NCBI RefSeq assembly: GCF_039654945.1
Contig: NW_027361672.1
Location: forward strand, 11,222,001-11,286,000
Length of the DNA stretch: 64,000 nt
Direction: 5' to 3'
DNA from: Dendrobates tinctorius
Taxonomy: Eukaryota
Positions 8,428 through 53,970 of the stretch are shown one piece after another (position 1 is the first letter of the stretch; each line of letters opens with the position of its first letter). The notes under the pieces were generated by a model. It saw only the letters and a list, made by a program, of their open reading frames with translations. It made no database searches and was not told where the DNA came from. Made by a program: the position numbers and the translations under genes.

Positions 8428-8430
8428 TTT

Positions 8431-9738: not shown

Positions 9739-9913
9739 CCCCTGGGGCAGAGGACCAACCCCCAGGAGTAGGACCACAAGGCCCAAAGAACTGGAGAGCC
9801 AAGTATGTTGGAGGGAGACCAGTCCTTCCAGTGGTGATTGACGGCATCCCCATGAACGCTTTGCTGGACACTGGCTCGCAGGTGACCACTATGCCCTATA
9901 TCCTCTACAAGCG

Positions 9914-14690: not shown

Positions 14691-16509
14691 TAAGAGTTCG
14701 CAGGATACTACCCAGTTTACCCACACCAGAGTTACGTAGATCTACCCGTACTACACAAGGTATACCACCCATTAGATTCCGCATATAAATAAATTAAAGT
14801 AATGGTAACCTGTACATGTACATATGTAACTGTTTAAGTTTTGTCAAGCAAATGTCCTGAGTATTTTTTTCACCACCTCAATAATGATTATGAAAATCCC
14901 ATATCCACCACCAATAAATGGCAGAAAGAGAGCCATAGAATAAAATTCCAACAATGTTTATTACATAACAATTTTCACAAAATTCATATTTAACAAGGTA
15001 AGTACACATAAATTAGCGCCATGGGTACATATAAAGAAACACTGTGAGGACAAAATTGTATACAGGACTAATACCAATAATTTCTCAATGAGATTGGAAA
15101 AATTGAACAAAAAACTTCATAGCTATTAGGTTAGCACTAGAGATGAGCGACTTTGCCTTTTTTCGGGTCGAGTCGGGTTTCACGAAAACCGAATTTCACA
15201 AAAGTCGGGTCGAACGAAATCGGCCGATTATCGTAAAAAGCCGAAGGCCGACTGAAACACGAAACCCAATGCAAGTCAATGGGGAAGCAAAGTCGGCAGG
15301 GAGTTGAGGACAGGAAACACACCTACAGTGCCCTTTTGAATGCCAAAAACATCAATTCTTATTACTGAAGTATTTCAACCTTAATTTACTTCATAATACT
15401 AGTTACGCACTGAAAAATGGGGGTTATTTGGCTAAATTTGTGGGGGGGTAGGGCTGGCTCCAGGTTTTCATGTGCCCTGGGCCAAAGAGCGCCCCTTTAA
15501 CACATAGCACAACTCATGATGCTCCGATACGGCAGAGAAATAGCGGTATAGTACAATGAAAAATACTTCACTTTTTACATCTCATGACTGATATCCATTT
15601 TAAATTCTCCAATAGCTCCAAAAACGGACAGTATATTACTCCATACAGTATTATGGCCACCGCATAGTGCGCTATACAGAGTAATGAGGCCCATATATTT
15701 CTCCATACAGAATCCCATATAATGTTTGAAACAGTATATGATGAGCTCCACATAATGATACAGTATATGTTGGTCCCCATGGATGAAGCTGCACTGTCTC
15801 ATGGGCCCAAATAATGCTCCATATATAATGGGCCCCATTTCTAATGCTCTAGTGTATAATGGGCCCTGTAAATGCTGCTCCAGTGTCTGATGTCCACCTT
15901 TGGAATGCTCCAGTGTATGGTGGGCCCCATCTATCATTCTCCATAGTATAGTGCTCCCCAAAAATTGCTGTCCCAACATTGAAAACAATTAAATAAGTCT
16001 CCTCGCTAGGGAATCCCTGTACTAGTCTGGGCGTACAGACGTGATGTCATTGCGCTCTCTGATCAGAATATCACTGTCAGGAAATGCGGAAGACGTCATG
16101 GCAGTGGAGCAGGGAGAGGTAAGTATTTCAGCTTTGCAAGTGCTGTGATCCTGAGCAAGCAGGGGGGGCCCTCTCGTTGGCGACGGCACTGGCACAGGGC
16201 CCCTCATAGTACGGCGGTGTGTCTGACGGCGGGTGTGCACCCCCACCGTCAGAGACACTTGATTGCACTATGAGGGACCCTGTGCCAGTGCCTGCGCCCA
16301 AGAGTCGGCCCACCCACCTGTCCAGGGCAACGGCACTCGCATGGTTACGTGTGCTAGGTGGTGACCCCGGCCATGGGGGGAGGAGGCAGCCCAGTTAGGG
16401 AGGTTTACAAAATGGCATATGTTGATGTGGGACATTCACCTGCTGCGAAAGGTGAAATTGGTCAAGTCCCAGGAAGAGGAGGACCAAAGAAAGCTATTTT
16501 TCTGTCACC

Positions 16510-19500
16510 CTATGTGTCATCAGGGTAAGGTGTGACAAAATCCTTGGAAACCCATGCATGGTTCATTTTAATGAAGGTTAGATCATCCACATTTTGGGTC
16601 GAGAGACAGGTCCTTTTTTCTGTCAGGATTGATCCAGCAGCACTGAAGACTCTTTCCGATAGCACACTTGCAGCTGGGCAAGCGAGCTCCTGTAAGGCAT
16701 ATTGTGCCAATTCAGGCCAGGTGTCCAGTTTAGCGGCCCAATAGTCAAATGGGAATGACCTGTGAGGGAGAACATCGATATGGGACGAGAAGTAGATTGT
16801 AACCATAGTTGACAAGTGCTGTCTCCTGTCACTTTCAATTGATGCAGTATTACCAGTCGTGTGAGCGGGACTTGAAAAATCAGTCCACAACATGGTCATG
16901 AAACCCCTGTCTCCAACGCCACTTCTGATGTGTGCACCACCAACACCTCTTCCAAGCTGCCCCTGGCCCCTACGGCTCATGTGAGAACCATCACCGCTGC
17001 TGTGTGCTGGGAATGCCTCAACCAACCGGTTTACCAGAGTTGCTTGTTTGTTAGCCAATATTAGGTCAAGGTTCTCCTGTGGCATGATGTTTTAGAATTT
17101 GCCTTTATAGCGTGGATCCAGGATGCTGGACAACCAGTAGTCGTCATCGTTCATCATTTTGGCAATGCGGGGGTCCCTTTTTAGGATCTGCAAGGCATAA
17201 TCTGACATGTGGGCCAATGTTCCCGGTGTCAATGATGCACTGCGAGTGCTGGGTGGAGGAGCACTTTCTGGCAAATCCACATCCCTCCAGTCACGCACAA
17301 ACCCTGTACCAGACCTTGCCACGCCAACATTTTCTCTTGCCCCATGAGAAGCATCCTCCGCCCCTAAATAATCATCCCCATCATCATCCTCCTCCTCTTC
17401 CTCTTCTTCCTCCACCTCGTCCAGGAGAGTTCCCGGAGCAGATAATGGCTGTCATCAAGGCTTCCCTCCTCCTCTTCCTCATCATCCTCGGCTGCAGACG
17501 CCTGCTCCTTAATGTGCGTCAAAGTTTGCATGAGCAGACGCATAAGTGGGATGCTTATGGTTATGATGGCGTCGTCTGCGCTTACCAGCCGTGTGCATTC
17601 CTCAGAACACTGAAGGACTTTACAGAGGTCTTTCAGCTTCGACCACTGCACACCTGTCAACTCCATGTCTGCCCTCAAAGTGCCTGCCCATGTATCCTCC
17701 CACAAATGCATTACGGCCTGCCTCTGTTTGCACAGCCGCTCAACCATGTGCAGGGTGGAGTTCCACCTTGTTGCTACGTCGATAATTAGGTGGTGCTTGG
17801 AAAGGTGGAGCAATCGCTGCAGCTTCTGCATACGACTGGAGTGTACCGGCGACCGGCGGATGTGCGAGCACAGTCTTCGGACATTCTGGAGCAGGCCTGT
17901 TAACTCCGGATAATTATTGAGGAAGCACTGCACCACCAGGTTCAAGGTGTGAGCCAAGCAAGGTATGTGTCTGAGTTTTGAAAGGGCTATGGCTGCCACA
18001 AAATTCCGTCCGTTATCACTAACTACCTTGCCTGCCTCAAGATGTAGACTGCCCAGCCATGACTCAGTTTGTCGCTGAAAGTAGTCGGCCAGTACCTCTG
18101 CGGTGTGTCTGTCGCCCAAACACATCATCTTCAACACAGCCTGCTGACGCTTTCCATTAGCTGATCGATAGGGGGACACCTCGTGTGCAACACTGGCAGC
18201 TGCGGATGGAGTGCTCGTGCGACTGCGTTCTGTGGACGAGCTTTCGCTTCTGGAGTAGGAGGAGGAGGAGGGTCGAACGCCTACAGCCAACTGTTTCCTA
18301 TACCGTGGGCTAGGCAGCACTGTCCCACCACCGCTGTCCCCTGTGGACCCTGCATCCACCACATTAACCCAGTGCGCAGTGGTGGACACGTAACGGCCCT
18401 GGCCATGCCTACTGGACCGTGCACCTTTCCACTCACTGATTGCTTGAGTGCATGTAAAATGCGGTCTTTCACATGAAGGTGGAGGGCTGGGATGGCTTTG
18501 CGAGAAAAGAAGTGGCGACTGGGTAGGTCATAGCGTGGTACTGCGTAGGCCATGAGTTCTCGGAAAGCTGCGCTTTCAACCAACCGATAGGGCATCATCT
18601 CTAACGAGATTAGTTTGGCAATGTGGGCGTTCAAACCCAGTGTACGCAGATGATTGGATGAGTACTTTCTTGTCCTACTCATAGTCTCTGGTAGGGTGAG
18701 CTGGACTTGAGAGCTGCATATGGTCGAACTAGCAGTGGACATGGCGGACTGAGAGAGGGTTGATGATGGTGATGGAGTTGGTGTTCTTTCTGGTGGCCTA
18801 GATTCAATCTTTTGTTGCAATAACAGTGTGATTCCCTGACTGATTTGCCCTTGCGACGACAACTCATCATTTGCTGCTGGTGGTGTGCTAACCGGTGGGC
18901 TTACAGTGGGGGAAACAATGTAGTGTTGCTGACTACCTTCTTTGGGAGCAGTTGCACATGTGGTACGTGAGTTTTGGTAGTCCGTCCACGCTTGCAAGTG
19001 CATGGTGGTTAAATGTCTTAGCATGTAACTGGTATTCAAATTTCTCAGATTTTTCCCTCTGCTAAAGGTCTTTGCGCACTTCTTACATATAACCTTTGCC
19101 TGATCATTAGGATTTTGTTCAAAAAAGTGCCACACTGCACTCTTCCTACTATCCAAGACATTTTGAGGCCTTGCACGCTGTGCTATTTTGACCGCCTGGC
19201 CAAGCTGTCCTGCAACTCTTTTGGTTTTTGTAACCTGTTTTTGGACTGCTTCGGGCCTGCCAGATAACAGCTGTTGTGATGTTGATGCCCGCTGCGGATG
19301 CTCCTCCTCCTCTTCTGAGCTATTGGCAGCGGCACCCTCTTCCCCCAATGGATGCCAATCTGGGTCAACAACTGGGTCATCCATCACCTCCTCTTCAATG
19401 TCATGTGCACCTTCCTCTGTGTCACTGTGTATGGTTGTATAGTATGCGGGAAGGGGCACCTGAGTTTCATCAGGGTCAGATTCTGCCTCAGTACACTGCG

Positions 19501-20047
19501 AGGACAATGTAGTGCTCTGAGTGAATGTACCAGCAGAATCATCTATCAGTGGCTGTGCATCAGTGCACTCCATGTCAGATTCACCTTGGCCTGGGTAATT
19601 CACGATTTGACTTGATAACCCTGGCATGGTATGTGAAAACAGCTCCATGGAGTAATCTGTAGTGTGGCCTGCCGCTTCCTTCAATTTTGGTTGGGGTGAA
19701 GGACACAAGGAAACGTGTGGTTCATGACCATGAGCCTCCAATGACGACTCAGTGCTTTTATTTTTTAAAACTTCAGAAGAGGAGGCGATAGAGCTGGAGG
19801 CTGAGTCAGCAATGTAAGCCAAAACTTGTTCTTGAAGCTCCAGCTTTAAAAGCGGTTTACCTACTCCCAGAAAAGGGAGCCTTCGAGGCCTTGTGGAGCC
19901 AGTCGATGACGCAGGCTCAACACCTCCTGCATTAGGTGCTATTTTGCTTTTGCCACTACCAGCAGATCCACCACCAACACCAACACCATCATTACCAGCT
20001 GCCAACCCCCGCCCACTTCCACGGACTCTTCCACCACACTTCCTCAT
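16510..20047 (-). pseudogene. hAT transposase with BED zinc finger (ZBED4/6-like), broken into four ORFs
   Basis: SAVWHFF..VICKKC..MLRHLTTMH (BED finger); VSDNGRN, CLAHTLNLVV, DVATRWNST, LDPRYK; C-terminal WPELA..ACPAASVLSERVFSAAG dimerisation domain. Confidence 0.92.
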
Positions 20048-20109
20048 TTTTGGGGAAAATCTACCCAAAAAACCACCAACTATATGGCACTGTAAAACAA
20101 GGTACAAGG

Positions 20110-22135
20110 TGTATATAGGAGTGGGGAGAATTTGAATCTCTCTAGACTTCAGGACACAGTTGGATTCTGTCAGGCCCTGTTTATATTACACCGCAATGTG
20201 ACAGGCAGATTCTGGATGGTGTAAGAAAGGTGTATAGAGGACTGTGAAGAATTTGAATCTCTCTAGAGTTCAGAACATAGTTGGATTCTGTCAGGCCCTG
20301 TTTATATTACTCCGCAATGTGACAGGCAGATTCTGGATGGTGTAAGAAAGGTGTATAGAGTAATGTGGAGAATTGGAATCTCTCTAGACTTCAGGACACA
20401 GTTGGATTCTGTCAGGCCCTGTTTATATTACACCGCAATATGACAGGCAGATTCTGGATGGTGTAAGAAAGGTGTATAGAGGACTGGGGAGAATTGGAAT
20501 CTCTCTAGACTTCAGGACACAGTTGGATTCTGTCAGGCCCTGTTTATGTTACACCACAATGTGACAGGCAGATTTTGGATGGTGTAAGAAAGGTGTATAG
20601 AGGACTGTGGAGAATTGGAATCTCTCTAGACTTCAGGACACAGTTGGATTCTGTCAGGCCCTGTTTATATTACACCGCAATGTGACAGGCAGATTCTGGA
20701 TGGGGTAAGAAAGGTGTGTAGAGGACTGTGGAGAATTGGAATCTCTCTAGACTTCAGGACACAGTTGGATTCTGTCAGGCCCTGTTTATATTACACAGCA
20801 ATATGACAGGCAGATTCTGGATGGTGTAAGAAAGGTGTATAGAGGACTGGGGAGAATTGGAATCTCTCTAGACTTCAGGACACAGTTGGATTCTGTCAGG
20901 CCCTGTTTATATTACACCACAATGTGACAGGCAGATTCTGGATGGTATAAGAAAGGTGTATAGAGGACTGTGGAGAATTGGAATCTCTAGACCTCAGGAC
21001 ACAGTTGGATTCTGTCAGGCCCTGTTTATATTACACCGCAATGTGACAGGCAGATTCTGGATGGTGTAAGAAAGGTGTATAGAGGACTGTGGAGGATTTG
21101 AATCTCTCTAGACTTCGGGACACAGTTGGATTCTGTCAGGCCCTGTTTATGTTACACCACAATGTGACAGGCAGATTTTGGATGGTGTAAGAAAGGTGTA
21201 TAGAGGGCTGTGGAGAATTGGAATCTCTCTAGACTTCAGGACACAGTTGGATTCTGTCAGGCCCTGTTTATATTACACCGCAATGTGACAGGCAGATTCT
21301 GGATGGGGTAAGAAAGGTGTGTAGAGGACTGGGGAGAATTAGAATCTCTCTAGACTTCAGGACACAGTTGGATTCTGTCAGGCCCTGTTTATATTACACC
21401 GCAATGTGACAGGCAGATTCTGGATGGTATAAGAAAGGTGTATAGAGGACTGTGGAGAATTGGAATCTCTAGACCTCAGGACACAGTTGGATTCTGTCAG
21501 GCCCTGTTTATATTACACCGCAATGTGACAGGCAGATTCTGGATGGTATAAGAAAGGTGTATAGAGGACTGTGGAGAATTGGAATCTCTAGACCTCAGGA
21601 CACAGTTGGATTCTGTCAGGCCCTGTTTATATTACACCGCAATGTGACAGGCAGATTCTGGATGGTGTAAGAAAGGTGTATAGAGGACTGTGGAGGATTT
21701 GAATCTCTCTAGACTTCGGGACACAGTTGGATTCTGTCAGGCCCTGTTTATGTTACACCACAATGTGACAGGCAGATTTTGGATGGTGTAAGAAAGGTGT
21801 ATAGAGGGCTGTGGAGAATTGGAATCTCTCTAGACTTCAGGACACAGTTGGATTCTGTCAGGCCCTGTTTATATTACACCGCAATGTGACAGGCAGATTC
21901 TGGATGGGGTAATAAAGGTGTGTAGAGGACTGGGGAGAATTGGAATCTCTCTAGACTTCAGGACACAGTTGGATTCTGTCAGGCCCTGTTTATATTACAC
22001 CGCAATGTGACAGGCAGATTCTGGATGGTATAAGAAAGGTGTATAGAGGACTGTGGAGAATTGGAATCTCTAGACCTCAGGACACAGTTGGATTCTGTCA
22101 GGCCCTGTTTATATTACACCGCAATGTGACAGGCT
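20110..22135. repeat. ~120-bp tandem array (~17 copies) inside hAT, just upstream of the transposase
   Basis: Unit GAATCTCTCTAGACTTCAGGACACAGTTGGATTCTGTCAGGCCCTG...GGTGTATAGAGGACTGTGGAGAATTG; variant GACTTCGGGA recurs at 601 bp. Confidence 0.95.
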
Positions 22136-22203
22136 GAAATTGCCTAGTGTATGACAAACTACAATGTGTATATAGAATTGGGCAGATTTGGAATTTCCCT
22201 AGA

Positions 22204-22860
22204 GTGTAGGTCTGTAAGAACTGACAAACTCCTCTGCTTTTACTTACAGTCACACACTTAGATAGCTTCAATTTGGCCGTGATAACAGCCGTTACACGGT
22301 ACTGAGAGAGGAGCGTGCACGTACACCGCTGTACGGTGTATGTAAAATTGTCAAGCTCCGTGTTTTTGTATACAGACTGACACGCTGTCTCTCTCTAGTT
22401 TTGAATGTAATCAAACAGCAAATATACTAAACTGTTTGAAAAATGGACAAAACTATAAGGTGTAGGTCTGTAAGAATGGACAAACTCCTCGACTTTTCCT
22501 TACAGAGTCACACACGTAGATAGCTTCAATTTGGCCGTGATAACAGCCGTTATACGGTACTGAGAGAGAAGCGTGCACGTACACCGCTGTACGGTGTATG
22601 TAAAATTGTCAAGCTCCGTGTTTTTGTATACGGACTGACACACGCTGTCTCTCTCTAGTTTTGAATGTAATCAAACAGCAAATATACTAAACTGTTTGAA
22701 AAATGGACAAAACTATAAGGTGTAGGTCTGTAAGAACGGACAAACTCCTCGACTTTTACTTACAGAATCACACACGTAGATAGCTTCAATTTGGCCGTGA
22801 TAACAGCTGTTACACGGTACTGTGTGAGGAGCGTACACCGCTGTACGGTGTGTGAAAAAA
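22204..22860. repeat. ~260-bp tandem repeat, ~2.5 copies, inside hAT
   Basis: GTGTAGGTCTGTAAGAA at 22204, 22460 and 22720. Confidence 0.9.
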
Positions 22861-23779
22861 TGAATGCTCACTACCTCACCAGGACAAAACAATACAATTT
22901 GGATTGCTTTTAAAAAAGCAGTTTGAACACCAGTGTGCACACAGCAATGCAGCTAGCCTTAAAAGGCAGGCTAATCACCACCAGCGCTGCTGCACAAAAG
23001 CAAAAATCTTCACCTTTCACTGCACAGTAACTACAGTGAAAAGCGCTAGCAGCAGAAGCAGTTAATTTTCTTTTTGCCTTCCTAACGCTCTCCCTACAAA
23101 ATCAGCAGCTGCAGCAGCTCTCCCTATTCTGAGATCAGCATGAGTAACATGGCGGTCGGCGTCCCCGCCCTTTTATACCCCCTGTGACGCCACACAAAGC
23201 AAGCCAATCACTTGCATGCCCTTCTCCAAGATGGTGGTGACTGCTGCCTATGTCATCACGTTGCCCACAGTGTCCGTTCTTCCTGATTGGCTGAAAAAGG
23301 GCGCAAAAGCATCTTTTGAAACGTGACTTTGGCGCGATGGTCGCCGACCTCGTGGCCGACCTCACGCTAAGGTCGGGTTTCGTTTCATGAAACCCGACTT
23401 TGGCGAAAGTCGGCGACTTTTGAATTTTTTCGACCCGTTTCGCTCAACTCTAATTAGCACCACAAAATATCAGATGCATATTATCAAGAGATTGTTTCTG
23501 TGAATCCACACTAGATCTAAAACATTTTTTTCAACTGGTCCAATCTCCATATAATGAGAATTCATTGTATCCACAGCACTACAAGCTCTAGTACAAAAAA
23601 CAATGTTTCAGATCATGTGTATTTAATTGCTGTGATACAAAAGAAGCACATAATGCAAGTCCAGAAAGGTGAGGGGAATTTCCATTACTGCAATACACTT
23701 GCTAGCCACCACATTATAAGAAAAAGAAAAAGTCCTTCACTTACATGTGCAATGCCTCTTAGATAAGTGCCCACAGCCA

Positions 23780-23816
23780 CCCCTGACAGCGCCGTTTCGC
23801 CAGATAGGCTTCCTCC
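23780..23816 (-). ncRNA. Minimal type I hammerhead ribozyme motif, 5' core truncated or altered
   Basis: Minus strand GAGGAA-GCC-tatct-GGC-GAAAC-ggcgct-GTC-AGGGG. Confidence 0.6.
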
Positions 23817-24124
23817 AATCTTTAAGTTTTGTGCCTGCAGATAATCTGTAAGATTGTTCTTTTTGAATTTTTCCCGCTTGTTTTCATAGACATTGTGACC
23901 ACAGGACTGTGTGTGGTCACTACTCTTGTAAATAGTTCACCATTTGCCCAGGAATGGACCATGGAAGTTGATGCTTGGACTTATCATCACAGGACTATTT
24001 TTGGAGCTTTTGTTTTTTGTAATTTTTTCCTTTTTCAAATCTTGCAACCTTCATATTGTTTATTTGTTTATTTATTCATATGTTTTTCATCAGCCCAGGA
24101 GTGCTGACTTGCACTAGGGGGGAA

Positions 24125-25145
24125 TGTGGCACCCCCCAGGAGTATGGCCACCACAGTGGCATTGCCTTCCTCCAGGGAGGGTAATGTCATGCTTGGAAGC
24201 AATGAAGGGTCTCTCTAACAGTTAATCATTTACATGCAACACGTTCCCACTCCAGGCCAGCAGAGGGAGCTCTGAGCCAGGATTGGGGGAGGAGCTCGCT
24301 CTGAGGGCCAGGAGGGGAAATAGGTAGTTAGTGTGAGGAGGGCAACGAGTGTAGATGTGTGGAGAGAAGCTGGAGGTTGAGCTGTGGACAGAGAGCTCCC
24401 TCCTTGTGATAGCGCATGATCTGGAGCCTGGTCTCCACGGTTGTATGGATACTGAAGGTCCTGCAACAGAAACCAGAGGAATAGGAAGCAGTAAATGCTC
24501 TATTCCCACCTAAGACTCGGAGGCACAACAGCGACTGGTGAGCCAAGAGAGATAGAGGGCTACAACTGTCTGCCATACGAGGTAGTTCTAAGAGAAGATA
24601 AGAAGGAGGAACTTCAGTGTAACACTGTACTGCATGTACCTCAAGCCAGCGCTAGGAGGACACTACACAACCCATCTGATAGAGAGATACCTGAGTTGCT
24701 TCCAGGCTAGCTGTCTCCTGTGCCATCTGTAATCAGGATCCTGGACTGCGTTTGCCAAGTAAAGGTAAAGAAACTGCACCCCTTTGTGTCCTTGCCTCCT
24801 TCCTGCAACATCCACAGCACTGCTACATCTCTGTGCCAAACACTGCACCTTCTTCCTAACCCTTTATCTACACTGCCCTGGGACTACAGCCCTGCCTGTG
24901 AAGGGCTACAACATCATAGCTGCACTACACCATCAGTCCCAGAGGATCTGCATGCAGCGTCGGCTTAACATCTCCCTTGCCGAACACCACAGGTGGCGTC
25001 ACGAATCACTTATAAACTTTATTCCCAACTGAACCCCTTTTACATGGGCGCCCAGGGCCACGGACCGGGTCACCGCTGCTGTGACATTCCCCTCTGAAGG
25101 ACCGGCCCGGTACCGAGTACCCCTCAGCCCTGGGAGGGCGACCCA
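24125..25145 (+). repeat. 3' LTR of Gypsy 1
   Basis: Direct repeat of 7407-8427, preceded by PPT. Confidence 0.95.
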
Positions 25146-25240
25146 CTGTCCAGAGGGACGGACTGGAAAAAGGGAATTAGACCTACCAGTAATTCGGTTT
25201 CCAGAGGTCCCTCAGAACAGCATCCTTATTTTCCCTCCCT
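25146..25240 (+). mobile_element. DIRS-type internal complementary region (ICR); left part at ~7380-7406, split by Gypsy 1
   Basis: Rejoined: GTGCTGTCCAGAGGGAC..CTGGAAA..GAATTA-gacctaccag-TAATTC..TTTCCAG..GTCCCTC..ACAGCA, a hairpin with the same layout as 32695-34730. Confidence 0.6.
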
Positions 25241-25249
25241 TATGTTTAT

Positions 25250-25576
25250 CTTTTGGCTTGCACAAGATCGATCTTTTTGCAGATTTTTTTTATACTTCAA
25301 CAGGGCAGAGAAGTACGCTGCGCAGGAGCACGATGCCGGTGAGCGATGAAGCAACAGGAGGGCGGCATCACAAGAAGATGGGAGGCGCCGGACCTGGACC
25401 TGCGACACCCATCGGACCAGACCACCCCTATCCCCCGAGTGAGGATAATAAAAGTTATTTTTCTTATCTTTCAGGTTGGACTGGGGGCTTATCTACAGCA
25501 TTGTAGAATGCTGTAGATAAGCCCTGAAAGGCAGTGGCCACATCTTATAGCGGCCAAAACAGGTGACAGGTTCCCT
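25250..25576. mobile_element. Kolobok/T2-type MITE remnant (one end)
   Basis: Ends GGTGACAGGTTCCCT|TTAA; hairpin GGCTTATCTACAGCATT..AATGCTGTAGATAAGCC. Confidence 0.55.
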
Positions 25577-26231
25577 TTAAAGTGACAACGGGTGGTGATT
25601 GATCTTTATGAATGTGACCATTTTAATAAGCCCCCTTGTTTTTTTTGTTTAAATCACTACGACAGACCAAAAAAAAGCTAGCTATAAGAAAAGGAACAGG
25701 GAATGTGTGCCATGTAAAACCCCCACTAGCAGTGGATTGGTAGCAAAATCTCTGTTCAGACTGCATCCACAAAACGAATAGTGAAGAGTGAGACCCAAGA
25801 TTTGCCGCAAGCCTTAGATCCGTTATCAGGGCTTAGGTGAAAGGTTCCTTAAAAACCCTATTAAAAAAAGGGAAGAAAAAATCTAGGGGAGTCTCATCTG
25901 ATTCTGACGTTTCTCTGTTATCAGAGGGAGGGTACCACAGTGAATCTTTATCCTCCTCCTCATCGGACAATGATATGGGGGACAGACCATGTTTACCGGT
26001 GGAGGATTAAGATAGGTTAGTTAAAGCTGTTAGGCTTAAAAGAGAAAATGGCTAGATCCCTAGAGGACGTGATGTCTGAGGGTTGGAGCAGAGAAAGAAA
26101 TGCACCTTACTGGTTAGTAATAATTCCAATAACAAGGAATGAAAAAAGCCTGTTAAAACCGGTGCCTTTCCATCATCTTCAAAAAGGAGATATCCTTTGG
26201 AGAAGAAGGTCACCCGCACTTTCCAAACTTA

Positions 26232-26415: not shown

Positions 26416-28237
26416 TTATAGAAATATACAGGCCGTTAACACCCAGAAACTTATGAAGAACTTGCAGTCATCATTGGCCCCTATCTCAACCCTCTCATGT
26501 CCTGACTCTGCACTGAAGCATTACAGTGAAACACTGCAAAGTGCCCTGTATGAAACCGCACTTCCTATACATAGAGCAGCTCGACACAGACTGCGACAAC
26601 CCTGGAACATGCTGCAAACACGTTTCCTACAGCGGTGCTCCAGGTGCTCCGAGTGTCTGTGGAGAAAATCCAATCTACCTGAAGATTTCATCCATTATAA
26701 GTTTATGCTTAAAACACACAACACTGCCTTTCACCTCTCCAAACAAACCTATTTCAACACCCTCATCACCTCACTATCCAATAACCCTAAACGTCTCTTT
26801 GACTCTTTTCATTCACTACTCAACCCAAGAGTGCAGGCCCTAACGACGGATCTCCGCGCTGATGATCTGGCCAATTACTTCAAAGAAAAAATGAGCCTTA
26901 TCCAATGGGAAATTTTCTCCCTATCCCCCAATACCATGCACTGTTCTCCCTCCCCCCCACTGCATCGAGCTCACTCTCTGATTTTGAACAGAAGAAGAAG
27001 TGATCAGGTTCCTTGCATCTTCTTGCCCTACTACTTGCACCTGTGACCCTATTCCGTCACATCTCGTCCCAGTCCTTTTCCCCTGCTATCACCACTCACC
27101 TAACAAAAATATTCAACCTCTCTCTCTCTTCCGGTATCTTTCCCTCCTCATTTAAGCATGCCATCATACATTCATTACATAAAAAACCATCCCTCGACCA
27201 AAACTGTGCTGCTAACTATAGACCTGTCTCTAATCTTCCCTTCTCTAAATTCCCCGACCGCCTGGTCCACTCACGTCTTATCCGTTATCTCTCACGTAAC
27301 TTTCTTCTCGACATTCTTCAATCCGGTTTCTGCTCTTTACACTCTACTGAAACTGCACTCACTAAAGTCTCATGATTTACTAACAGCTAAATCTAATGGT
27401 CCCTACTCTATGCTAATTCTCTTGGATGTCTCTACAGCATTTGTGGCGCCCCTGAGGGTTCAGTCACCACAGAGATACTGCACCTCCTCCTGAAATGTGG
27501 TACCCCACCATCCAGGTAAGGTGGAGACACCTGACCACACTCCAACACCTGCATCCCACACAACATAGTAGTGTAGCAAAGCACCTTTGGTGGCTCCCTG
27601 CTTGGAACACGAAGAGTGCTTGGAGGTGGGTGGAGCTTAGTCTGCACAAGAGAGCGGGAGATTATTAGGACTAGGTCAGTCTGTGAGAAGAGATCCCTTG
27701 AGTGGGATGGATGGAAAGAGGTGCTGCAGCAGTCTCCTGTGACCTGGAGCTGCTGGCACGGGAAAGAGATATAGAAAGCCTGATTCTCCATAAGAAAGAT
27801 TGATTTGTACGGAACATGAGGAGAAGAAGAGAACTAAGGACTAGGGTCAGAGTGGAACCCTTCCTCAAGTTCTAAGCGCATGGCCGAGGTCCGGTCCCCA
27901 AGGTTGTATGGCTACTAATGGTCCTGCAGCAGACACCGGAGGAATAGAAGTTGTCACCACTTTATTCCCACACAAGATTAGGGGGCACAAAAGCAACGTG
28001 AGTGAGCCGGGACTTGGTAGCAAGGAGTCCCCGAAGCAGGCTACAGCTGTATGCCGTACAAGTAGAGTTCAAAGGAACATCTTAAAGGAGGAACTTGGGT
28101 TTAACACACAACCACAAGTACTTCATTACAAGCGCTAGAAAGGAGACGTTCAGGAAAGGCATATGTTGGCGGAGTGTTGGAACGGAGTACTTAATCTTGC
28201 CTGGAGGTTGACTGAGCCCCTGACCTGGAGGACACAG

Positions 28238-30371
28238 CAGAGGCGTATCTAGGCTTCCTGGCGCCCGGGGCAGAATTTGGTTCGGCGCCCCCACCCCCCC
28301 CCAAGTACATATGCGACTTGCACACTTAGCCATGTACCCACGAGCTGCTCTCCCTAATGCTCTCAATGTTCAGTAAAAAACTGAAAGCAGGAAGAGAAGC
28401 TCATTGTAAAGTATGAAAATCGCATATGAGTGAAGTGTCCGTGTGACGACTACTGGAACCTGCAGAGCTGAATCCTGACATTGCAGCTTCTGAATTCTCA
28501 CAACGAATGCACTGCACACATTTAGGATTCTCCTTTGCCGATGTACAGTCATGTCAGCACAAGTATGTGATTTATATACTTCTGGCCACACTCCGACTAG
28601 ACGTGCCCGGCCTCGCTCCGTTCATTTTCATTGAGTGAGGCCACACATGTCTAGTCAGCATGTGACCGCATGTATGTAAATTACCAGCATGAGAGAATCA
28701 TAACAGCGTTCAGTGCGCACTGTGAGAATTCAGAAGTCTACAGTCACATAGAATGACTGCAGACTCCGTACAAACCTGGAGAACCCCTTTAATGTTCCTA
28801 ACAAATAAAAACATGAGAATAAGTCAGTTGCACAAATAACATTTACATCCAGGTACCTTATAGATGACGTCGTCTCTGGAGTCGTTCTCCTTTTCTTCTT
28901 CTTGTCCAAACCCCATGATGAGTTTTCTCATCCACAGCCGTCTCTGCAGACTTCCATCTTCTCCGGTCTTCTGCAGCAAATCTCCACACGATGCCCTTAA
29001 ACACAGAAGTGTCATTATAATGCTCCTAAATACAAATATCTGCAATATACTGTGGCCTCACACTATTCCCCTCCCTCCTCTAACATCCCTCTGTTCACCA
29101 TACTGTCTCATCATATATTTACCCCCTCACTCTCTATATTGTCTGCTCACACATACCCCCGACTCCCCATACTGTGTCCACATACATTAACCCGTTCTCT
29201 CCCCATACTATTCGCACCCAACCCGCATACTGTTTCCTCATACATACTCTGTGTCCTGAAATCTCCCCACACACATTAAATCCCCCCCATCCCCACTCCA
29301 AATCCCTCACACACATTAAGTAACCCCCATCCCCACTCCTAAATCCCCCCACACATTATGTACCCCCACTCCAAATCCCCCACACATTAACCCCCATCCC
29401 CACTCCAAATCCCCCACACATTAAATAACCCCCATCCTCACTCCCAAATCCCCCACACACATTATGTACCCCCCACTCCAAATCCCCCACATATTAACCC
29501 CATCCCTACTCATTAACCCCCCCAAACAATAACCCCCATCCCCACTCATTAATTCCATCCCCACTCATTAACCCCCCCATCCATACCCCCAAATCCCCAA
29601 CACATTATGTACCCCCCACTCCAAATCCCCCACACATTAACCCCCATCCCAACTCATTAACCCCCCAGACATTAATTCCATCCCCACTCATTAACCCTCC
29701 ACAAATTAATTCCATCCCCACTCAATAACCCCCATCCCCACTCATTAACCCCCCACTCAATAACCCCTATCCCCACTCATTAACCCCCCACACATTAACC
29801 CCCATCCCCACTCTTTAACCCCCCACACATTAACCCCATCCCCACTCTTTAACCCCCCCACACTGTAACCCCCATTCATTAACCCCATCCCCACATTAAC
29901 CTCATCTCCACTCATTAACCCCCCCACGCATTAACCCCATCCCCACTCATTAACCCCACTACACATTAACCCCATCGCCACACATTAACACCCCCCATCT
30001 TCGGTGGTTTCTTCAGCTCCACATTGGAGCACACTTACCACCAGCGCTGAGCGTTCACTGAGCACTCTGGGCGTCGGGGAGTGACGTCAGCAGCGTGATC
30101 ACTTGACATGTCACGCTGCTGACGTCGCTCTGGCCCGGCGGTCAGAGCTGCAATTGTACTGGCGTCTATACAGACGCCAGTACAATTGTTCCCTGGGAGC
30201 CGGCACGCGCACCTTCTCTGCGCCAGCTGTCAGCTTGACAGCTGACACAGAGAACCGCCGACTCTCAGGCTGGGGGGGCACTGCGGACCGCTGCATTGCG
30301 GCCTGGACTGCGCCACCTGCCGGCTGCGCCCGGGTCAACTGCCCCGGCTGCCCCCCCTAGATACGCCCCTG
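28238..30371. mobile_element. Non-autonomous hAT element inside the solo LTR
   Basis: TIR CAGAGGCGTATCTAGG / CCTAGATACGCCCCTG; perfect 8-bp TSD GGACACAG at 28230-28237 and 30372-30379. Confidence 0.92.
29270..29998. repeat. C-rich minisatellite (CATTAACCCC/ATCCCCACT motifs)
   Basis: Irregular tandem repeats, almost no G on the plus strand. Confidence 0.9.
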
Positions 30372-32707
30372 GGACACAGCACCGAGGTGGGCACCTGTAT
30401 GCACAACAGACTGAGTAAAGCTTTGAAACTACATGCCCTGGTGTCCTCCGCTTATTTCTGCGTCAACCCTCTCAGCACTGCTACATCTCTGTGCTTAACT
30501 CTGCACCATTACGCTCTCCTCACTATTTCTCCATCTACACTGCCCTGGGACTACAGCCCTACCTGTGGAGGGCCACAACATCATTGCTGCACCACACCAT
30601 CTGTCCCAGAGGATCTGTCTGCAGTGTCGGCTTAACATCTTCATTACCAAACACCACAGGTGACGTCACGTATCATCCACTTATAAACTTTAATCAGCCA
30701 CACTTACACCATTCCTTTTACATGGACGCCCAGGGCCACGGACAGGGCCACTGCCACTGTGACAACTCCCATTGAAACCCAAGGGCCCAGTACCAAGTAC
30801 CCCACGGCCCTGGCGACCCACATTCGACAATGTGGATCATCAGCATCTCCTCACTATGCTCCGCTCCATTGGCCTCAAGGACACCATTCTCTCCTGGTTC
30901 TCTTATCTCTCTGACCGCTCCATCACTGTATCTTTTGCTGGTTCCTCCTCCTCTTATCTTTGCCTTACTGTTGGGTTTTCTTAAGGATCAGTCCTAGGCC
31001 CCCCCTCTTCTCTTTGTATACTCCCCCTATTGGACAATCAGTAGATTTGGTTTCCAGTACCATCTCTATGCTGATGACACCCAATTATACACCTCCTCTA
31101 CTGACATCACGTCTGCCTTTTTAGAAAATACCAATGATTGTCTTACCACTGTCTTCAACATCATGTCCTTCCTCTATCTGAAACTCAACCTGTCTAAAAC
31201 TGAACTCCTTGTGCTTCCTTCCTCTACTAACCTACCTATGCCTGACATTGCCATTTCCGTGTGTGGTTCTACCATTACTCCCCAGCAACATGCCCGCTGT
31301 CTTGGGGTCATACTTGATACAGAGCTTGCATTCACCCCCCACATCTGATCACTGGCTCGTTCTTGTTATCTGCACCTCAAAAACATTTCTAGAATTCAAC
31401 CTTTTGATACTTTCGACTCTGCAAAAACTCTTACTGTTTCTCTTATTGATTCTCGTCTGGACTATTGTAACTCTCTGCTAATTGGTCTCCCTCTTACCAA
31501 ACTCTCCCCTCTCCAATCTGTCTTGAATGCTGCAGCCAGGATCATATTCCTTACCAGCCATTACACCGATGCCACTACCTTGTGCCAGTCATTACACTGG
31601 TTACCCATCCACTCCAGAGTTCAGTATAAACTTATTATCCTCACCCACAAAGCTCTCCATGGCTCAGCACCACCCTACATCTCCTTCCTCGTCTCAGTCT
31701 ACCACACTACCCGTTCCCTCCTTTCTGCTAATGACCTGAGATTAACATCCTCAGTAATCAGAACCTCCCACTCTGGTCCCCAAGACTTTTCACGTGCTGT
31801 GACAATTTTTTAGAATGCACTACCCAGGTTAGTTCGATTAATCCCTAATACCCAGTTTTAGGCGTGCCCTAAAAACGCATTTCTTCAGACTGGCCTACCG
31901 AATCAACACAATAATCTAACGTTCACTATGTTGCCCATTCAAAATGTTTACCATAACCAGGTTCCTTGTATCATGTTCTCATATGCCTTATGCATTTAAT
32001 AGCCATCTGTGTCTGTACTGTTACACTAAAATGTAAAGTGCTACGGAATATGTTGGCGCTATAGAAATAAAATTATTATTATTAAGGACTCAGAGACATA
32101 GGTTACGGTCCCTAAGATTGATGTAGCTGTGTCAAAGTCCTCAAAGAGGTCGACCCTACTTAGAAATCCGTTAGATAAAAAAGCAGATGGATATCTAAAG
32201 TACACGTGAGAAGCGACAGCAGGGGGTCTGAAGCTGATGATTGCCGGAAACTGCACCGCCCGTTCACTTATAATTTGGCTGCAAAAAGTGGAGGAACCAC
32301 TCAGCGATGAAACCCCATGGAATAAGATTTTGGCCAACCTACCTTTGTTACAGGGAGCTGCAGCATTTTTGGCAAACACATCTGCAGACTGTGAGGCTAG
32401 TAGATAGGTCTGCTGGTTTGTCGAATGCAACAAGACTAGCTTAATGGCTCAAAGGTTATCCGGGAGATCTTAAATCTAAAAATAAACTATGCTCAATACC
32501 GTGTCATGGCCAAATTTTGTTAGGGGAAGAAATTGGACGACATCTTAGAAAAGGCTGGTGAGAAAAAGGGCTTCCCAGGTTCACAAATGATACAAGGAAG
32601 ACTTCCTTTCAGAGGAAAAAATATAATAGGGGACGTCCTCCAGGGAAAAGAAGGAAATGGTCCCACCCTAAGATGTTTCAATTCTCCATAAATCTCTCAG
32701 GTGTGCT

Positions 32708-33608
32708 TGTAATAACGTGCAGGAGGAATATATGTCTTACGGAGCAGGCAGACCAACAGTAAAAGGGGAGGTTTATTTACAGGGAGTAATACTGGTAAAC
32801 ATACAATATAACAGAGAAAGTACTGTAAAAGGTTATATCAGAAACTGGAGAAATAACAGAGGTGCAAAACAACAGAAAGTTATTCTCTTATGGGGAAGAA
32901 ACTTATCAGTTCCTGGAGGTCTTGATTGCAGAGATCACTCTTCTCCCACGTAGGCACCGAGGCACAAGCGGTGCTTGATGTCCTCTGTCTCTGGGGTCCT
33001 AGGTATAGTCCAACTGGTGTATAGGGTGTTAACGTGGGAGCCCAAGGGGTATGCGGATGGCGTTATCCCCCTGTACTCAAGGTCCTTCCCTCTGCTGAGG
33101 CAGCGGCGTTCTCTCACCAGGGTCAGGGGCTCTGCCAGGGACAGTCTCTCTTGGCAGGTCAGTGTCATGTTACGGTACGTCCCTTGGTCACAGGGAAGTG
33201 TCTCAGGGCAAGGCAGGTTCTCACTGCAGGGGAGCGTCTTGTCAAGGCACGTGGTCTGTCGGTGTGAAAAAGTCTCTACCAGGAGGGGAGCGACCAGCCC
33301 TCCAAGCGGTGCAGTGACAGGCTTTTCGTACTCAGTCTCGTGCTCAGTGCTCATTGCCTGTGTCTGCGGTCCCTCAGTGTTACCCTTCTCCTCTCCTCTC
33401 CTGTGTCAGCGTCCTCTCTGCTCCCGTCCCTGCGCTGATCTGCTGAAACCGCGCCCAATTCTCCCGCTCCCAGTCCTGCCCTCTTCCTGGTTCTAGTACA
33501 GTTCCCTAAAGCATCCCCCGGGGAACCTAATGCCCTGCTCGATGGTTCCAGTCAAGGAGCTAGGAATGCAAGCCCCCCTCGGCTCCTTCGGTGCTTCACC
33601 CCCTTACA
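32708..33608 (-). mobile_element. Solo LTR A (901 bp, family not otherwise seen in this window)
   Basis: TGTAA...TTACA termini; TGCT TSD at 32704-32707 and 33609-33612; minus-strand AATAAA ~32775. Confidence 0.8.
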
Positions 33609-33614
33609 TGCTGT

Positions 33615-34644
33615 TGTAGTGCTAGGAGGTACGCAGGATGCAGTGTCGAGTCACAAGACAACTCTGGTGCTTTTTATAATAACGTTTATGAGACTTGAGG
33701 GGACTTTCCTCAGTCACGGCCTGATCACCGAAACAGGGGTAACACAGGTGGCCCACGCAGGAGCTCTAAACTAGCAAACACAGTTGTGTGGAACACGACT
33801 ACTCCCGGCAACAGCCGGTCACTATAGGGCCGCGGTATGGCCGACTACGGGTCCTTAAGTCTAGAGTCTATTTAGCCGTCCAGACGTCCCTCGCCATTTG
33901 GGCTGGTGGTCTTTCGGCGGAGTAGTTGCTGGGCCCAGTTGCTGAGGCGTTGATGAAGTCTTTGCGCTCTCCGGCGCGTTGAGGACACTGGAGCCCCACA
34001 GGCCCCAGCGGAGTCCTTGGTCGGACGGGCCACAGCTCCCGGACCGGAGCAGGCGGCAGCGATGTATGGTGGCGAGTCACAGGCCACCTGCGCAGCTAAC
34101 GGCTGCGATGGGGAGTCCGCAATCAGCAGAGGCCTGGCCCATGCTGCGGACCAAAGCGGGACAGTGGTGGCCACAGACGGCGCGGTGCTGGCCGCGGCCA
34201 CTGGTGGGAGCAGGGCGGCCGCGGGTGGCAGGGAACAGGCTGCGGCTGCGGGCTCAGGAGAGGCGGCCGCGGGCAACCGCGGGTAGGCCACAGCCGAGGG
34301 CAGGGGGAGGCGACAGCGGCCACGAGCTGGAGCGGGGAAACAAGTCTCGGACGGGTCTCCGGAAACCGTCCCTCTGGAGTCTTCAGTGGGCGTCCTCCCT
34401 GGCGCTGGTGAGTCGCTCTAGCTGGCAGTCGCTCCCACGCTCTCCTGCTGTCTATGTCCCGGTCTGCTGACTCATCGTCTGGGGAATTCCCCGCCTCCTT
34501 TATACCGGTTCCTCCCCCAGCCCATCTGTCTGTCACAACGGTCCGTCCTCGAATCCTGTCCCCCGGGAACAGTTTCCCCTGGAGCCCAGATGACGGCACC
34601 TCTGGTTCCGGCCTAGACACTCGACGGGGGCCGTTCCTCCCACA
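33615..34644 (-). mobile_element. Solo LTR B (1030 bp), diverged relative of Gypsy 3 LTRs
   Basis: Reverse complement begins TGTGGGAGGAACGG like 58056; CTGT TSD at 33611-33614 and 34645-34648. Confidence 0.92.
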
Positions 34645-35543
34645 CTGTCATGGGTGAAGAGAAAACAAGGTCACTTACTGGTAGCCATTTTTTCCAGAAC
34701 GCATGAGAGCACTCATATATCCCCCCCACTTTCTCATCATATGGGTCTGCACAATATATTGAGTGCTTTTTTTTGTGATGTCGGTTATGTATATAATTTT
34801 TTTGGGGAGGTCCTCTCATGCTCTGTAATCCAACTGATGCGGGGGAGGTGTGCTGTCATGGGTTCTGGAAAAATCGGCTACAGGTAAGTAACCTTGGTGT
34901 TGTGTGAAATCAAGGTTTCACTGGCAAGCATGTTAATTATGGCAATATGTATAACATATAGGCTCAAATTCATCATTTGTAGTTTTTTTTAAATACTTTT
35001 CCTTATTATCTTGTGTTATTAGTTGCTGTTTTTTTCTCCAGAAATTCTTCAAAATGACACATGCCATTCATGAATTTAGGTCAAAATCAAATTTTTCTAA
35101 AAGTTTTTGGCACCAAAAGTCAAATGTTTATCAAAATGTTGCAAAAACTGACATACAGTACTGGTGTACTCGAATACATCAAGGGGGAGTAGAGTTGTAC
35201 CAAACCTTGACCTTTTTAAAGTCACAGTTGATCAATCTGGGATCGCTAAACTACATTCAGTTCATTTTGTGCCTTTGTCACTTTGGGCAAAGTACAAAAC
35301 AAACTGTCACAGTCAATTAATCCGTTCCTTGCACGTTTGTGGTAACATCCACATGGTGATGGCTGTGCATCTAAATCTCTGCTCGCCTGCAGTGGCTACA
35401 GAACTTTTTTTATTTTTTGGGATTGTCTTAGTGGGTTGAAAGTACACATCCAGTGCATTGAATGAAATTCTCTGAAACTACTGCTACCCAATTTTAATTT
35501 CCTCTCCTATAACTGAACTTTTTTTTATTATCTGTTGCCTTAA

Positions 35544-40866: not shown

Positions 40867-40911
40867 CGTGACTGCATCTTGGATGGTTCAATGATATGCT
40901 GTGGCTCTTCT

Positions 40912-43805: not shown

Positions 43806-43806
43806 G

Positions 43807-53165: not shown

Positions 53166-53183
53166 TGGCGTAGTCGGCAGGAT
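53166..53183 (+). promoter_or_regulatory. Primer-binding site, tRNA-Ser(AGA/TGA)
   Basis: TGGCGTAGTCGGCAGGAT, the complement of the vertebrate tRNA-Ser 3' end ATCCTGCCGACTACGCCA. Confidence 0.9.
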
Positions 53184-53940: not shown

Positions 53941-53970
53941 AGACCATTTGCCTCTTACGATTGTGGAGAA

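What the first reader, a model, noticed from the sequence alone, without database searches (positions are those of the whole stretch)
32695..34730. LTR retrotransposons repeatedly hit the same motif of DIRS internal complementary regions
Seen: removing solo LTR A (TSD TGCT) and solo LTR B (TSD CTGT), which are 2 bp apart, restores GGTGTGCTGTCATGGGTGAAGAGAAAAC..., the left arm of a DIRS ICR-like hairpin. Gypsy 1 (7407-25145, TSD CTGT) sits at the equivalent GGTGCTGT|CC position of a different ICR-like hairpin. So three of six LTR insertions in 64 kb, from three distinct LTR families, fall in one 7-nt motif. The solo LTR at 27442 also abuts TGCTGT on the minus strand. Inference: a sequence or cruciform-directed preference, or tethering to DIRS ends, meaning Gypsy elements may parasitise the replication signal of another retrotransposon. 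I know of no description of this.
Basis: partly seen in the sequence, partly recalled or inferred. Interest (0 to 1): 0.8.

Follow-up and report, generated by a model that had tools for sequence, protein, structure and literature searches.

The report
LTR insertions cluster in DIRS hairpins
In this frog DNA, three different LTR retrotransposons landed within a few bases of the same spot in the hairpin signal of two dead DIRS retrotransposons, which points to an insertion hot spot, but its cause and its reach across the genome could not be tested here.

Summary
Solo LTR A (32708-33608, TSD TGCT), solo LTR B (33615-34644, TSD CTGT) and Gypsy 1 (7407-25145, TSD CTGT) are ordinary integrase insertions with TG..CA ends and exact 4-bp duplications.

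Removing A and B restores the internal complementary region (ICR) of a DIRS element. A profile built only from other frogs' ICRs matches both halves (E 1e-11 and 9e-21). Contigs of the same species carry the uninterrupted form. The flanks encode DIRS gag.

The second hairpin is a diverged, orphan DIRS ICR (E 1e-4 for the part that excludes the motif). Gypsy 1 splits it at the same profile position. All three hits lie in base pairs 2-8 of the basal stem, inside the conserved motif GGTG(TG)CTGTCATGGG.

Uniform insertion would give this with P about 1e-10 to 4e-9. The fourth example (27442) sits in an L2 LINE reverse-transcriptase gene, not in DIRS.

Eight ICRs from six other genomes are all intact. 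The window's species is missing from the searchable collections, so no genome-wide test was possible.

The most likely cause is an intrinsic integrase preference for this sequence. Cruciform or protein tethering is not excluded. Nothing supports parasitism of a replication signal.

The parts
7396..7406 (+). Site 2, left piece of an orphan DIRS ICR (TGTGGTGCTGT), ending in TSD copy CTGT (7403-7406)
   Evidence: The restored site aligns to the ICR profile at hmm 51-151 without a break. It pairs with 25214-25222 in the hairpin.
7407..25145 (+). Gypsy 1, a full-length Ty3/gypsy element (LTRs 7407-8427 and 24125-25145, 96.6% identical). It holds a nested hAT transposon and a satellite array.
   Evidence: Gag-like, RT-RNaseH and integrase zinc-finger domains found. 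TSD CTGT on both sides.
25146..25250 (+). Site 2, right piece of the orphan DIRS ICR (TSD copy CTGT, rest of the left arm, loop, right arm ACCTACCAGTAATTCGG..CAGAACAGCA)
   Evidence: A profile built only from other genomes matches 25151-25250 at hmm 59-151, E 1.1e-4. Hairpin z = -4.0.
25584..26231 (+). DIRS copy of site 1: N-terminal half of gag
   Evidence: Colinear with the gag of the L003 DIRS, 62.5% over 1288 nt across the L2 junction.
26421..32084 (+). 5'-truncated L2 LINE nested in the DIRS gag. It carries the solo LTR 27442-30820 (TSD CATT) inside its reverse-transcriptase ORF.
   Evidence: Translations show the L2 RT motifs and the L2 3' tail. The LTR is 80% identical to the Gypsy 1 LTR. 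TSD checked.
32085..32691 (+). DIRS gag, C-terminal half, ending at stop 32689-32691
   Evidence: Piece 32210-32404 finds 38 proteins, best E 8e-14. The hits carry Pfam LAP2alpha, several also RVT_1 and some an RNase H match. LAP2alpha derives from DIRS1 gag (PMC4495291).
32652..32707 (+). Pre-ICR segment and first bases of the left ICR arm (..CTCAGGTGTGCT), ending in TSD copy TGCT
   Evidence: Profile hmm 5-55, E 9.6e-12. 80% identical to L003 15165 onwards.
32708..33608 (.). Solo LTR A (orientation unknown)
   Evidence: TG..CA ends, TSD TGCT on both sides. Laid-contig depth far above that of single-copy contigs. No similarity to the other LTRs in the window.
33615..34644 (-). Solo LTR B, of the Gypsy 3 family
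   Evidence: TSD CTGT on both sides. 80% identical in reverse orientation to the LTRs at 52135-53163 and 58056-59100.
34645..34716 (+). Rest of the site 1 ICR: CTGTCATGGGTGAAGAGAAAACAA, then the right arm GGTCACTTACTGGTAGCC..GCATGAGAGCAC
   Evidence: Profile hmm 54-145, E 8.8e-21. The right arm is complementary to the right terminus (85% over 47 nt).
34807..34901 (+). Right inverted terminal repeat and right terminus of the DIRS copy. It holds an unbroken copy of the 17-mer GGTGTGCTGTCATGGGT (34847-34863) and CAG|GTAAGT.
   Evidence: Profile E 1.8e-12. 91% identical to L003 15487-15541. Laid-contig depth about 22,000 in this bin against 30-70 beside it.
52135..59100 (+). Gypsy 3, a full-length relative of LTR B, inserted at a non-DIRS site (TSD TGTA)

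Best explanation
Two relic DIRS-type retrotransposons lie in this window. One is a gag-only deletion derivative that keeps its ICR and right end. The other is an orphan ICR. Each ICR hairpin has been split by LTR-retrotransposon integration at the same place: base pairs 2-8 of the basal stem, inside the conserved inner-ITR motif GGTG(TG)CTGT|CATGGG. Site 1 was hit twice and site 2 once, by three unrelated LTR families.

Shown: the events are ordinary integrase events, the targets are homologous DIRS ICRs, and the placement is non-random.

Inferred as the most likely cause: this motif is an intrinsically favoured target DNA for the 4-bp-duplicating Ty3/gypsy integrases of this genome. It reads GTG | 4 bp | CAY, is rich in flexible TG/CA steps, and the TSD CTGT has a central TG step. 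Each DIRS element carries the motif up to four times and DIRS elements are abundant, so LTR elements land there again and again.

This is collateral damage between selfish elements. It is not use of the DIRS replication signal.
For: - Integrase hallmarks and exact TSDs for all three insertions.
- Site 1 is a DIRS ICR. A profile from other genomes matches both halves (E 9.6e-12 and 8.8e-21). It is 80-91% identical to the intact DIRS of locus L003, which has gag, RT, the left terminus and the right terminus in the expected order. Uninterrupted paralogues occur in the same species. The flanks encode DIRS gag.
- Site 2 matches the same profile from hmm 59 onwards, a stretch that excludes the motif itself (E 1.1e-4).
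- Non-randomness: P about 1e-10 to 4e-9.
- All three hits have GTG directly 5' of the TSD. LTR B's site is GTG|CTGT|CAT, which is palindromic in its flanks.
- Gypsy 1 and Gypsy 3 polymerases are related: 52% identity in RT-RH and 37% in the integrase N-terminus. A shared preference is therefore plausible.
- Retroviral integrases are known to favour weak palindromes and flexible pyrimidine-purine steps at the centre of the target (PMC4422553).
- If LTR B came first, LTR A landed in a half-motif already separated from its hairpin partner by 1 kb. That fits sequence recognition, not structure.
Against: - There are only three events, in one window that was picked because of them.
- The same families also inserted elsewhere without the motif. 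Gypsy 3 sits at ATG[TGTA]TAC and the Gypsy-1-like solo LTR at CAG[CATT]CGA.
- An identical 17-mer in the right ITR (34847-34863) and a close match at 46129 are unoccupied.
- LTR A's TSD, TGCT, does not fit the flexible-centre rule.
- Eight ICRs and at least twelve ITR motif copies from six other genomes are unbroken. Those loci were found through gag gene models, so they may be biased toward intact copies.
- No target logo could be made for any of the three families.
Confidence: 0.45

Rival explanations
1. Structure-directed integration. The ICR palindrome extrudes as a cruciform, or is otherwise distorted, and the integrases prefer the distorted DNA at the base of the stem.
For: All hits lie in the first 2-8 bp of the basal stem of hairpins that are more stable than shuffles (z -3.1 and -4.0). 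Both hit copies are hairpin copies, while the identical 17-mer in the non-hairpin right ITR is empty. Retroviral integrases prefer cruciform targets in vitro (PMC3279379, citing Katz 1998). RAG transposition also targets hairpins (PMC1618415). The test against the other GTGCTGT sites gives P = 0.003.
Against: The published in-vitro hot spots lie next to the loop, not at the stem base (PMC3279379). The stems are imperfect and the loops hold 20-30 nt, which makes extrusion in chromatin unlikely (inference). Only the 5' arm is hit. If B inserted first, A's target had already lost its partner arm. With n = 3, ICR against ITR is not significant: (2/4)^3 = 0.125 for the extended motif.
Confidence: 0.15
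2. Protein-mediated targeting. A protein bound to the conserved inner-ITR motif bends the DNA or tethers the Gypsy intasome. Candidates are the DIRS tyrosine recombinase from active copies, or a host silencing or DNA-binding factor. The analogues are Sap1 for Tf1 and TFIIIB for Ty3.
For: The motif is conserved across DIRS families of several frogs and of a more distant genome: L003 AGGTGTGCCGTCATGGG, L006 and the window GGTGTGCTGTCATGGG, L004 CGTGGTGCTGTCATGGG. That conservation suggests a protein-recognition site. Three LTR families with different LTRs converge on it. Tethered integration is well established for Ty3-type elements (PMC6101501).
Against: There is no direct evidence. The recombinase binding site of DIRS elements is not known. 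The right ITR copy of the same motif is not hit here. ICRs in the other genomes are intact.
Confidence: 0.15
3. Coincidence in a very transposon-dense region, picked out by scanning many windows.
For: The finding comes from a scan of very many windows. Only three events support it. Eight other ICRs are unbroken. If integrases already restrict themselves to a small share of sites, the chance probability rises by orders of magnitude.
Against: Uniform-insertion P is 1e-10 to 4e-9. The three hits fall within 2 bp of the same profile column in two independently diverged ICRs. They come from three LTR families.
Confidence: 0.1

Closest known systems
Non-random nesting and weak palindrome preference of plant LTR retrotransposons (Jedlicka et al. 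2019, PMC6911290)
   Same: LTR retrotransposons nest in particular regions of other elements. Their TSDs and flanks are non-random. Family-specific 4-bp and 5-bp TSD classes exist.
   Different: That work concerns LTR-in-LTR nesting in plants, with broad regions and a very small palindrome effect. Here the hits are base-pair-precise, repeated, in a DIRS (tyrosine-recombinase) element's ICR, in an amphibian.
Intrinsic target-DNA preferences of retroviral integrases (PMC4422553; Katz et al. 1998 as cited in PMC3279379)
   Same: Weakly palindromic flanks, a flexible pyrimidine-purine step at the centre of a 4-bp duplication (CTGT fits), and a preference for distorted or cruciform DNA in vitro.
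   Different: The known preferences are weak and genome-wide. The in-vitro cruciform hot spots lie beside the loop, whereas these hits lie at the stem base. No Ty3/gypsy integrase of a vertebrate has been shown to have such a preference.
Tethered Ty3/gypsy-type integration (Ty3-TFIIIB, Tf1-Sap1, DGLT-A at tRNA genes; PMC6101501 and general knowledge)
   Same: Independent insertions pile up within a few base pairs of a defined DNA feature.
   Different: Those systems have an identified protein tether, and most copies of the family use the target. Here no tether is known, and each family also has a non-motif insertion in the same window.
DIRS-1 clustering and self-nesting in Dictyostelium centromeres (PMC3950715, PMC7192593)
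   Same: DIRS sequences act as landing sites for further retrotransposon copies.
   Different: There the incoming element is DIRS itself, or Skipper at the regional level. It uses a recombinase or chromatin targeting, not integrase hits at one motif of the ICR.

Membership tests
DIRS-like retrotransposon (site 1 host) | gag-like ORF1 of the DIRS type (Pfam LAP2alpha-related) | tested here: met
   Piece 32210-32404 hits 38 proteins. The hits carry LAP2alpha, several also RVT_1 and some an RNase H match. The gag is colinear with that of the L003 DIRS across the L2 insertion. PMC4495291 links LAP2alpha to DIRS1 gag.
DIRS-like retrotransposon (site 1 host) | RT/RNase H/methyltransferase and tyrosine-recombinase ORFs | tested here: not met
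   Absent from the window copy. The alignment jumps from L003 10648 to 15165, an internal deletion of about 4.5 kb. The L003 relative has RT. Pfam did not detect its recombinase.
DIRS-like retrotransposon (site 1 host) | ICR made of two parts complementary to the left and right termini (PMC9210276) | tested here: met
   The right ICR arm 34666-34712 is complementary to the right terminus 34850-34896 (85%). The left terminus is missing from the window. In the L003 homologue it is complementary to the left ICR arm. Profile E values are 1e-11 and 9e-21.
DIRS-like retrotransposon (site 1 host) | Inverted terminal repeats at both ends | tested here: inconclusive
   The right ITR is present (34807-34901). 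No left ITR is found in the window. The copy is cut off at 25584 beside a half MITE.
DIRS ICR (site 2) | Homology to bona fide ICRs beyond the shared 7-mer, and hairpin architecture | tested here: met
   A profile from other genomes matches 25151-25250 at hmm 59-151, E 1.1e-4 in the window. Hairpin z = -4.0. It shares GTGGTGCTGTC with the L004 DIRS.
DIRS ICR (site 2) | Adjacent DIRS body and a matching right terminus | tested here: not met
   No partner terminus in the window. Upstream DNA does not match the profile. Downstream is a half MITE. It is an orphan fragment.
LTR retrotransposon insertion (Ty3/gypsy) | TG..CA termini and short exact target-site duplication | tested here: met
   Met for A, B, Gypsy 1, Gypsy 3 and the solo LTR at 27442.
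LTR retrotransposon insertion (Ty3/gypsy) | Internal gag, RT-RNase H and integrase in gypsy order | tested here: met
   Met for Gypsy 1 and Gypsy 3. LTR B belongs to the Gypsy 3 family by 80% LTR identity. LTR A has no internal part, so its superfamily is untested.
Target-specific LTR retrotransposon | A large share of a family's insertions use the same target genome-wide | not testable with these tools
   The window's species is not in the protein or contig collections; the best RT hits are 59-71% identical. The single read-laying run did not list the loose ends at the LTR termini.

The most novel reading that the evidence does not exclude
The conserved inner-ITR/ICR motif of frog DIRS elements is a genome-wide landing pad for several unrelated Gypsy families. 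Recognition would be through its hairpin context or through a protein bound to it, such as the DIRS recombinase. One retrotransposon order would then systematically home into, and inactivate, the replication signal of another.
Probability: 0.2. Interest if true: 0.75.

Novelty: new variant of a known kind. Interest (0 to 1): 0.5.

Why it matters
If it holds genome-wide, this would be a base-pair-precise insertion hot spot of vertebrate Ty3/gypsy elements inside a functional signal of DIRS elements. That would be a concrete case of one transposon order shaping the decay of another in giant amphibian genomes. It would also give a natural substrate for asking what target features gypsy integrases read: sequence, DNA shape or a bound protein. 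If it is only local, it is a neat but ordinary example of nested insertions. Full-text searches found no description of Gypsy insertions into DIRS ICRs.

Tried and rejected
1. Genome-wide flanks from reads. The one read-laying run confirmed the empty site and gave relative depths. Its loose-end table was filled by the L2 tail, so the flanks of other LTR A and B copies were not shown.

2. Harvesting more copies through proteins. The Gypsy 3 RT finds nothing closer than 59-71% identity. The Pristimantis loci L001 and L002 share no DNA with the window. The window's species is therefore not in the collections.

3. Pfam on 28 ORFs next to both sites found no DIRS domain. DIRS identity came only from the HMMER search with a 65-aa piece.

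4. Site 2 as the 5' leader of the gag-bearing DIRS: rejected. 25297-25583 is half of a palindromic MITE-like repeat, and homology to DIRS starts only at about 25591.

5. Site 2 and site 1 as the two ends of one element: rejected. The arms do not match.

6. The solo LTR at 27442 as a fourth case: rejected. Its host is an L2 RT ORF and its TSD register differs.

7. The RT ORF at 37210-38694 as DIRS: rejected. It is a CR1 LINE.

8. Pairwise alignment of site 2 against site 1 gave only z = 3.1, mostly from the motif itself. It was replaced by the independent profile test.

9. LTR pairs in the other loci gave only one clean extra site (L002, TSD CTTG, not the motif). That is too few for a logo.

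10. Earlier scan notes hold nothing on LTR hits in DIRS ICRs.

Full report
**1. What is in the sequence**

The window is transposon-dense frog DNA. Earlier scan notes call it a poison-frog-like genome. The closest fetched DNA is locus L003, from a 1.25-Gb chromosome of assembly GCA_032444005.1.

I confirmed six LTR insertions. Each has TG..CA ends and an exact duplication.

| Element | Coordinates | TSD | Note |
|---|---|---|---|
| Gypsy 1 | 7407-25145 | CTGT | LTRs 96.6% identical |
| Gypsy-1-like solo LTR | 27442-30820 | CATT | inside an L2 LINE |
| Solo LTR A | 32708-33608 | TGCT | orientation unknown |
| Solo LTR B | 33615-34644 | CTGT | reverse orientation, 80% to the Gypsy 3 LTRs |
| Chromovirus | 36976-44681 | GTGGT/TTGGT | minus strand, 5-bp TSD with one mismatch |
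| Gypsy 3 | 52135-59100 | TGTA | full length |

Pfam confirms gag, RT-RNase H and integrase in Gypsy 1 and Gypsy 3, and the chromodomain in the chromovirus. LTR A, LTR B and the Gypsy 1 LTR share no sequence. The Gypsy 1 and Gypsy 3 polymerases are 52% (RT-RH) and 37% (integrase N-terminus) identical.

**2. The empty sites**

Removing A and B, which are 2 bp apart, restores ..CTCAGGTGTGCTGTCATGGGTGAAGAGAAAACAAGGTCACTTACTGGTAGCC..GCATGAGAGCAC. Removing Gypsy 1 restores ..TGTGGTGCTGT|CCAGAGGGACGGACTGGAAAAAGGGAATTAGACCTACCAGTAATTCGGTTTCCAGAGGTCCCTCAGAACAGCA.

Logan contigs of the same species join 32703/05/07 directly to 34645/48/66/69, with small sequence variants. Uninterrupted paralogues of site 1 therefore exist as DNA.

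Both restored sites fold as hairpins, with DNA-parameter z = -3.1 and -4.0. The ICRs of two other frogs fold the same way (z = -4.0 and -6.3). All three insertions lie in base pairs 2-8 of the basal stem, on the 5' arm.

**3. Is it DIRS?**

No DIRS domain turned up in Pfam scans of 28 neighbouring ORFs. A 65-aa stop-free piece just left of site 1 (32210-32404) did find 38 proteins, best E 8e-14. These carry the Pfam LAP2alpha domain, and several also carry RVT_1, some with an RNase H match. LAP2alpha is a co-opted DIRS1 gag (PMC4495291).

The best hit led to locus L003, which holds a complete DIRS at 8573-15541:
- left terminus and ITR at 8573-8700;
- gag at 9788-10723 and RT at 10524-12107;
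- ICR at 15203-15285;
- right ITR and terminus at 15487-15541.

This layout is the one described for Xenopus DIRS-like elements (PMC9210276). The restored site 1 is 80-91% identical to that ICR and right end.

The window copy is a gag-only deletion derivative:
- Gag is split by a MITE and a 5'-truncated L2 (26232-32084). It stays colinear with L003 gag across that junction, 62.5% over 1288 nt.
- The alignment then jumps from L003 10648 to 15165.
- Its right ICR arm is complementary to its right terminus at 34846-34896 (85%).

**4. Site 2**

Site 2 is not attached to that DIRS. 25297-25583 is the right half of a palindromic MITE-like repeat, also seen at L003 6300-6880. DIRS homology begins only at about 25591.

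Pairwise similarity of site 2 to site 1 is weak (z = 3.1) and leans on the motif itself. I therefore built an ICR profile from three copies in two other frog genomes only. In the window it hits:
- the two halves of site 1 (hmm 5-55, E 9.6e-12; hmm 54-145, E 8.8e-21);
- the right ITR (E 1.8e-12);
- 25151-25250 (hmm 59-151, E 1.1e-4).

That last hit is the part of site 2 to the right of Gypsy 1, which does not contain GTGCTGT. The restored site 2 aligns from hmm 51 to 151 without a break.

Site 2 is therefore a diverged, orphan DIRS ICR. Gypsy 1 splits it at the same profile columns (about 54-59) where A and B split site 1. No matching right terminus or DIRS body is present.

**5. The motif**

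The target is the inner-ITR core: AGGTGTGC(C/T)GTCATGGG in L003, L006 and the window, and CGTGGTGCTGTCATGGG in the more distant L004. Each element carries it in the left ITR, the left ICR arm and the right ITR, and in degenerate form in the right ICR arm.

**6. Chance**

GTGCTGT occurs 13 times in the window, against 10.2 +/- 3.2 expected. With uniform insertion, three or more of six LTR insertions falling within 2-3 DIRS motif copies has P between 1e-10 and 4e-9.

Conditional on three hits at GTGCTGT sites, all three falling in the two ICR copies out of 14 sites has P = 0.003. For the longer motif GGTG..CTGTC there are only four sites, and P = 0.125. The identical 17-mer in the right ITR (34847-34863) and AGGTGCTGTCCGG at 46129 are unoccupied. 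Sequence and structure therefore cannot be separated with this window.

**7. The fourth example**

The solo LTR at 27442 has TSD CATT and sits inside the FDNVDH region of an L2 reverse-transcriptase ORF. It touches TGCTGT in a different register and has nothing to do with DIRS. I do not count it.

**8. Replication elsewhere**

In 346 kb from six other genomes (L003-L006, L009, L010), all eight ICRs and at least twelve ITR motif copies are unbroken at this position. These loci were reached through gag gene models, so they may over-represent intact copies, and they hold other LTR families. They do not refute a hot spot in this species, but they do not replicate it either.

The window's own species is absent from the protein and contig collections, so the decisive genome-wide test could not be run.

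**9. Mechanism**

The events are integrase events; this is shown. Why they fall here is inference.

I favour an intrinsic integrase preference for this TG/CA-rich, near-palindromic sequence, for four reasons:
- All three sites have GTG directly before the TSD, and B's site reads GTG|CTGT|CAT.
- CTGT has the flexible central step favoured by retroviral intasomes (PMC4422553).
- The two characterised families have related polymerases.
- If B inserted first, A hit a half-motif that no longer had its hairpin partner nearby. The order of A and B cannot be read from the sequence.

A cruciform-directed choice is possible. However, the published in-vitro hot spots lie beside the loop, not at the stem base (PMC3279379), and these imperfect stems with large loops are poor candidates for extrusion.

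A protein bound to the conserved motif could also guide the intasome, as Sap1 does for Tf1. The DIRS recombinase or a host factor are candidates. This is untested.

Nothing suggests that Gypsy elements gain from the DIRS signal. Both DIRS copies are dead, and the hits destroy the ICR.

**10. Novelty**

Non-random nesting and weak palindrome preference of LTR retrotransposons are known in plants (PMC6911290). So are tethered Ty3-type integration (PMC6101501) and DIRS self-clustering (PMC3950715). Full-text searches found no report of LTR insertions concentrated in DIRS ICRs, and the scan's earlier notes hold none.

I rate it a new variant of a known kind. It is real in this window and unproven beyond it.

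Noticed in passing
25584-26231, 32085-32691 and 34645-34901: The DIRS copy hosting site 1 is a gag-only internal-deletion derivative. Gag is joined about 45 nt upstream of the ICR, and the RT/RH/MT/recombinase part is missing (about 4.5 kb in L003). It could be a non-autonomous DIRS form or a one-off deletion.
   Followed up: partly
25297-25583; L003 6300-6880: Right half of a palindromic MITE-like repeat of about 580 bp. The full copy is in L003. It holds a near-perfect 40-nt palindrome at 25485-25524.
   Followed up: partly
26232-26420: A 189-bp MITE with inverted ends (TAAGGCCAAGGTCAGACTTG..) sits exactly at the 5' junction of the truncated L2 LINE.
   Followed up: no
37069-38771: A 5'-truncated CR1 LINE (open 494-aa RT ORF at 37210-38694, ATTCTATG tail repeats) lies inside the left LTR of the minus-strand chromovirus 36976-44681.
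   Followed up: partly
16510-22247: A hAT transposon (BED finger and hAT dimerisation ORFs, minus strand) and a 121-bp satellite array (20020-22247) are nested in Gypsy 1. They account for its 17.7-kb length.
   Followed up: no
34880-34888 and 25183-25191 (minus strand): Splice-donor-like CAG|GTAAGT in the DIRS right terminus, and CTG|GTAGGT in the right arm of the orphan ICR.
   Followed up: partly
25150-25296: A small run (32 million letters) from another study, kind unknown, holds all sampled words of the orphan-ICR region. The region may be multi-copy or transcribed.
   Followed up: no
L002 3800-7200 (minus strand): A probable Ngaro-like tyrosine-recombinase element in Pristimantis, judged only by eye from ORF translations that resemble a recombinase N-terminus and a hydrolase. 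It was seen while looking for DIRS copies.
   Followed up: no
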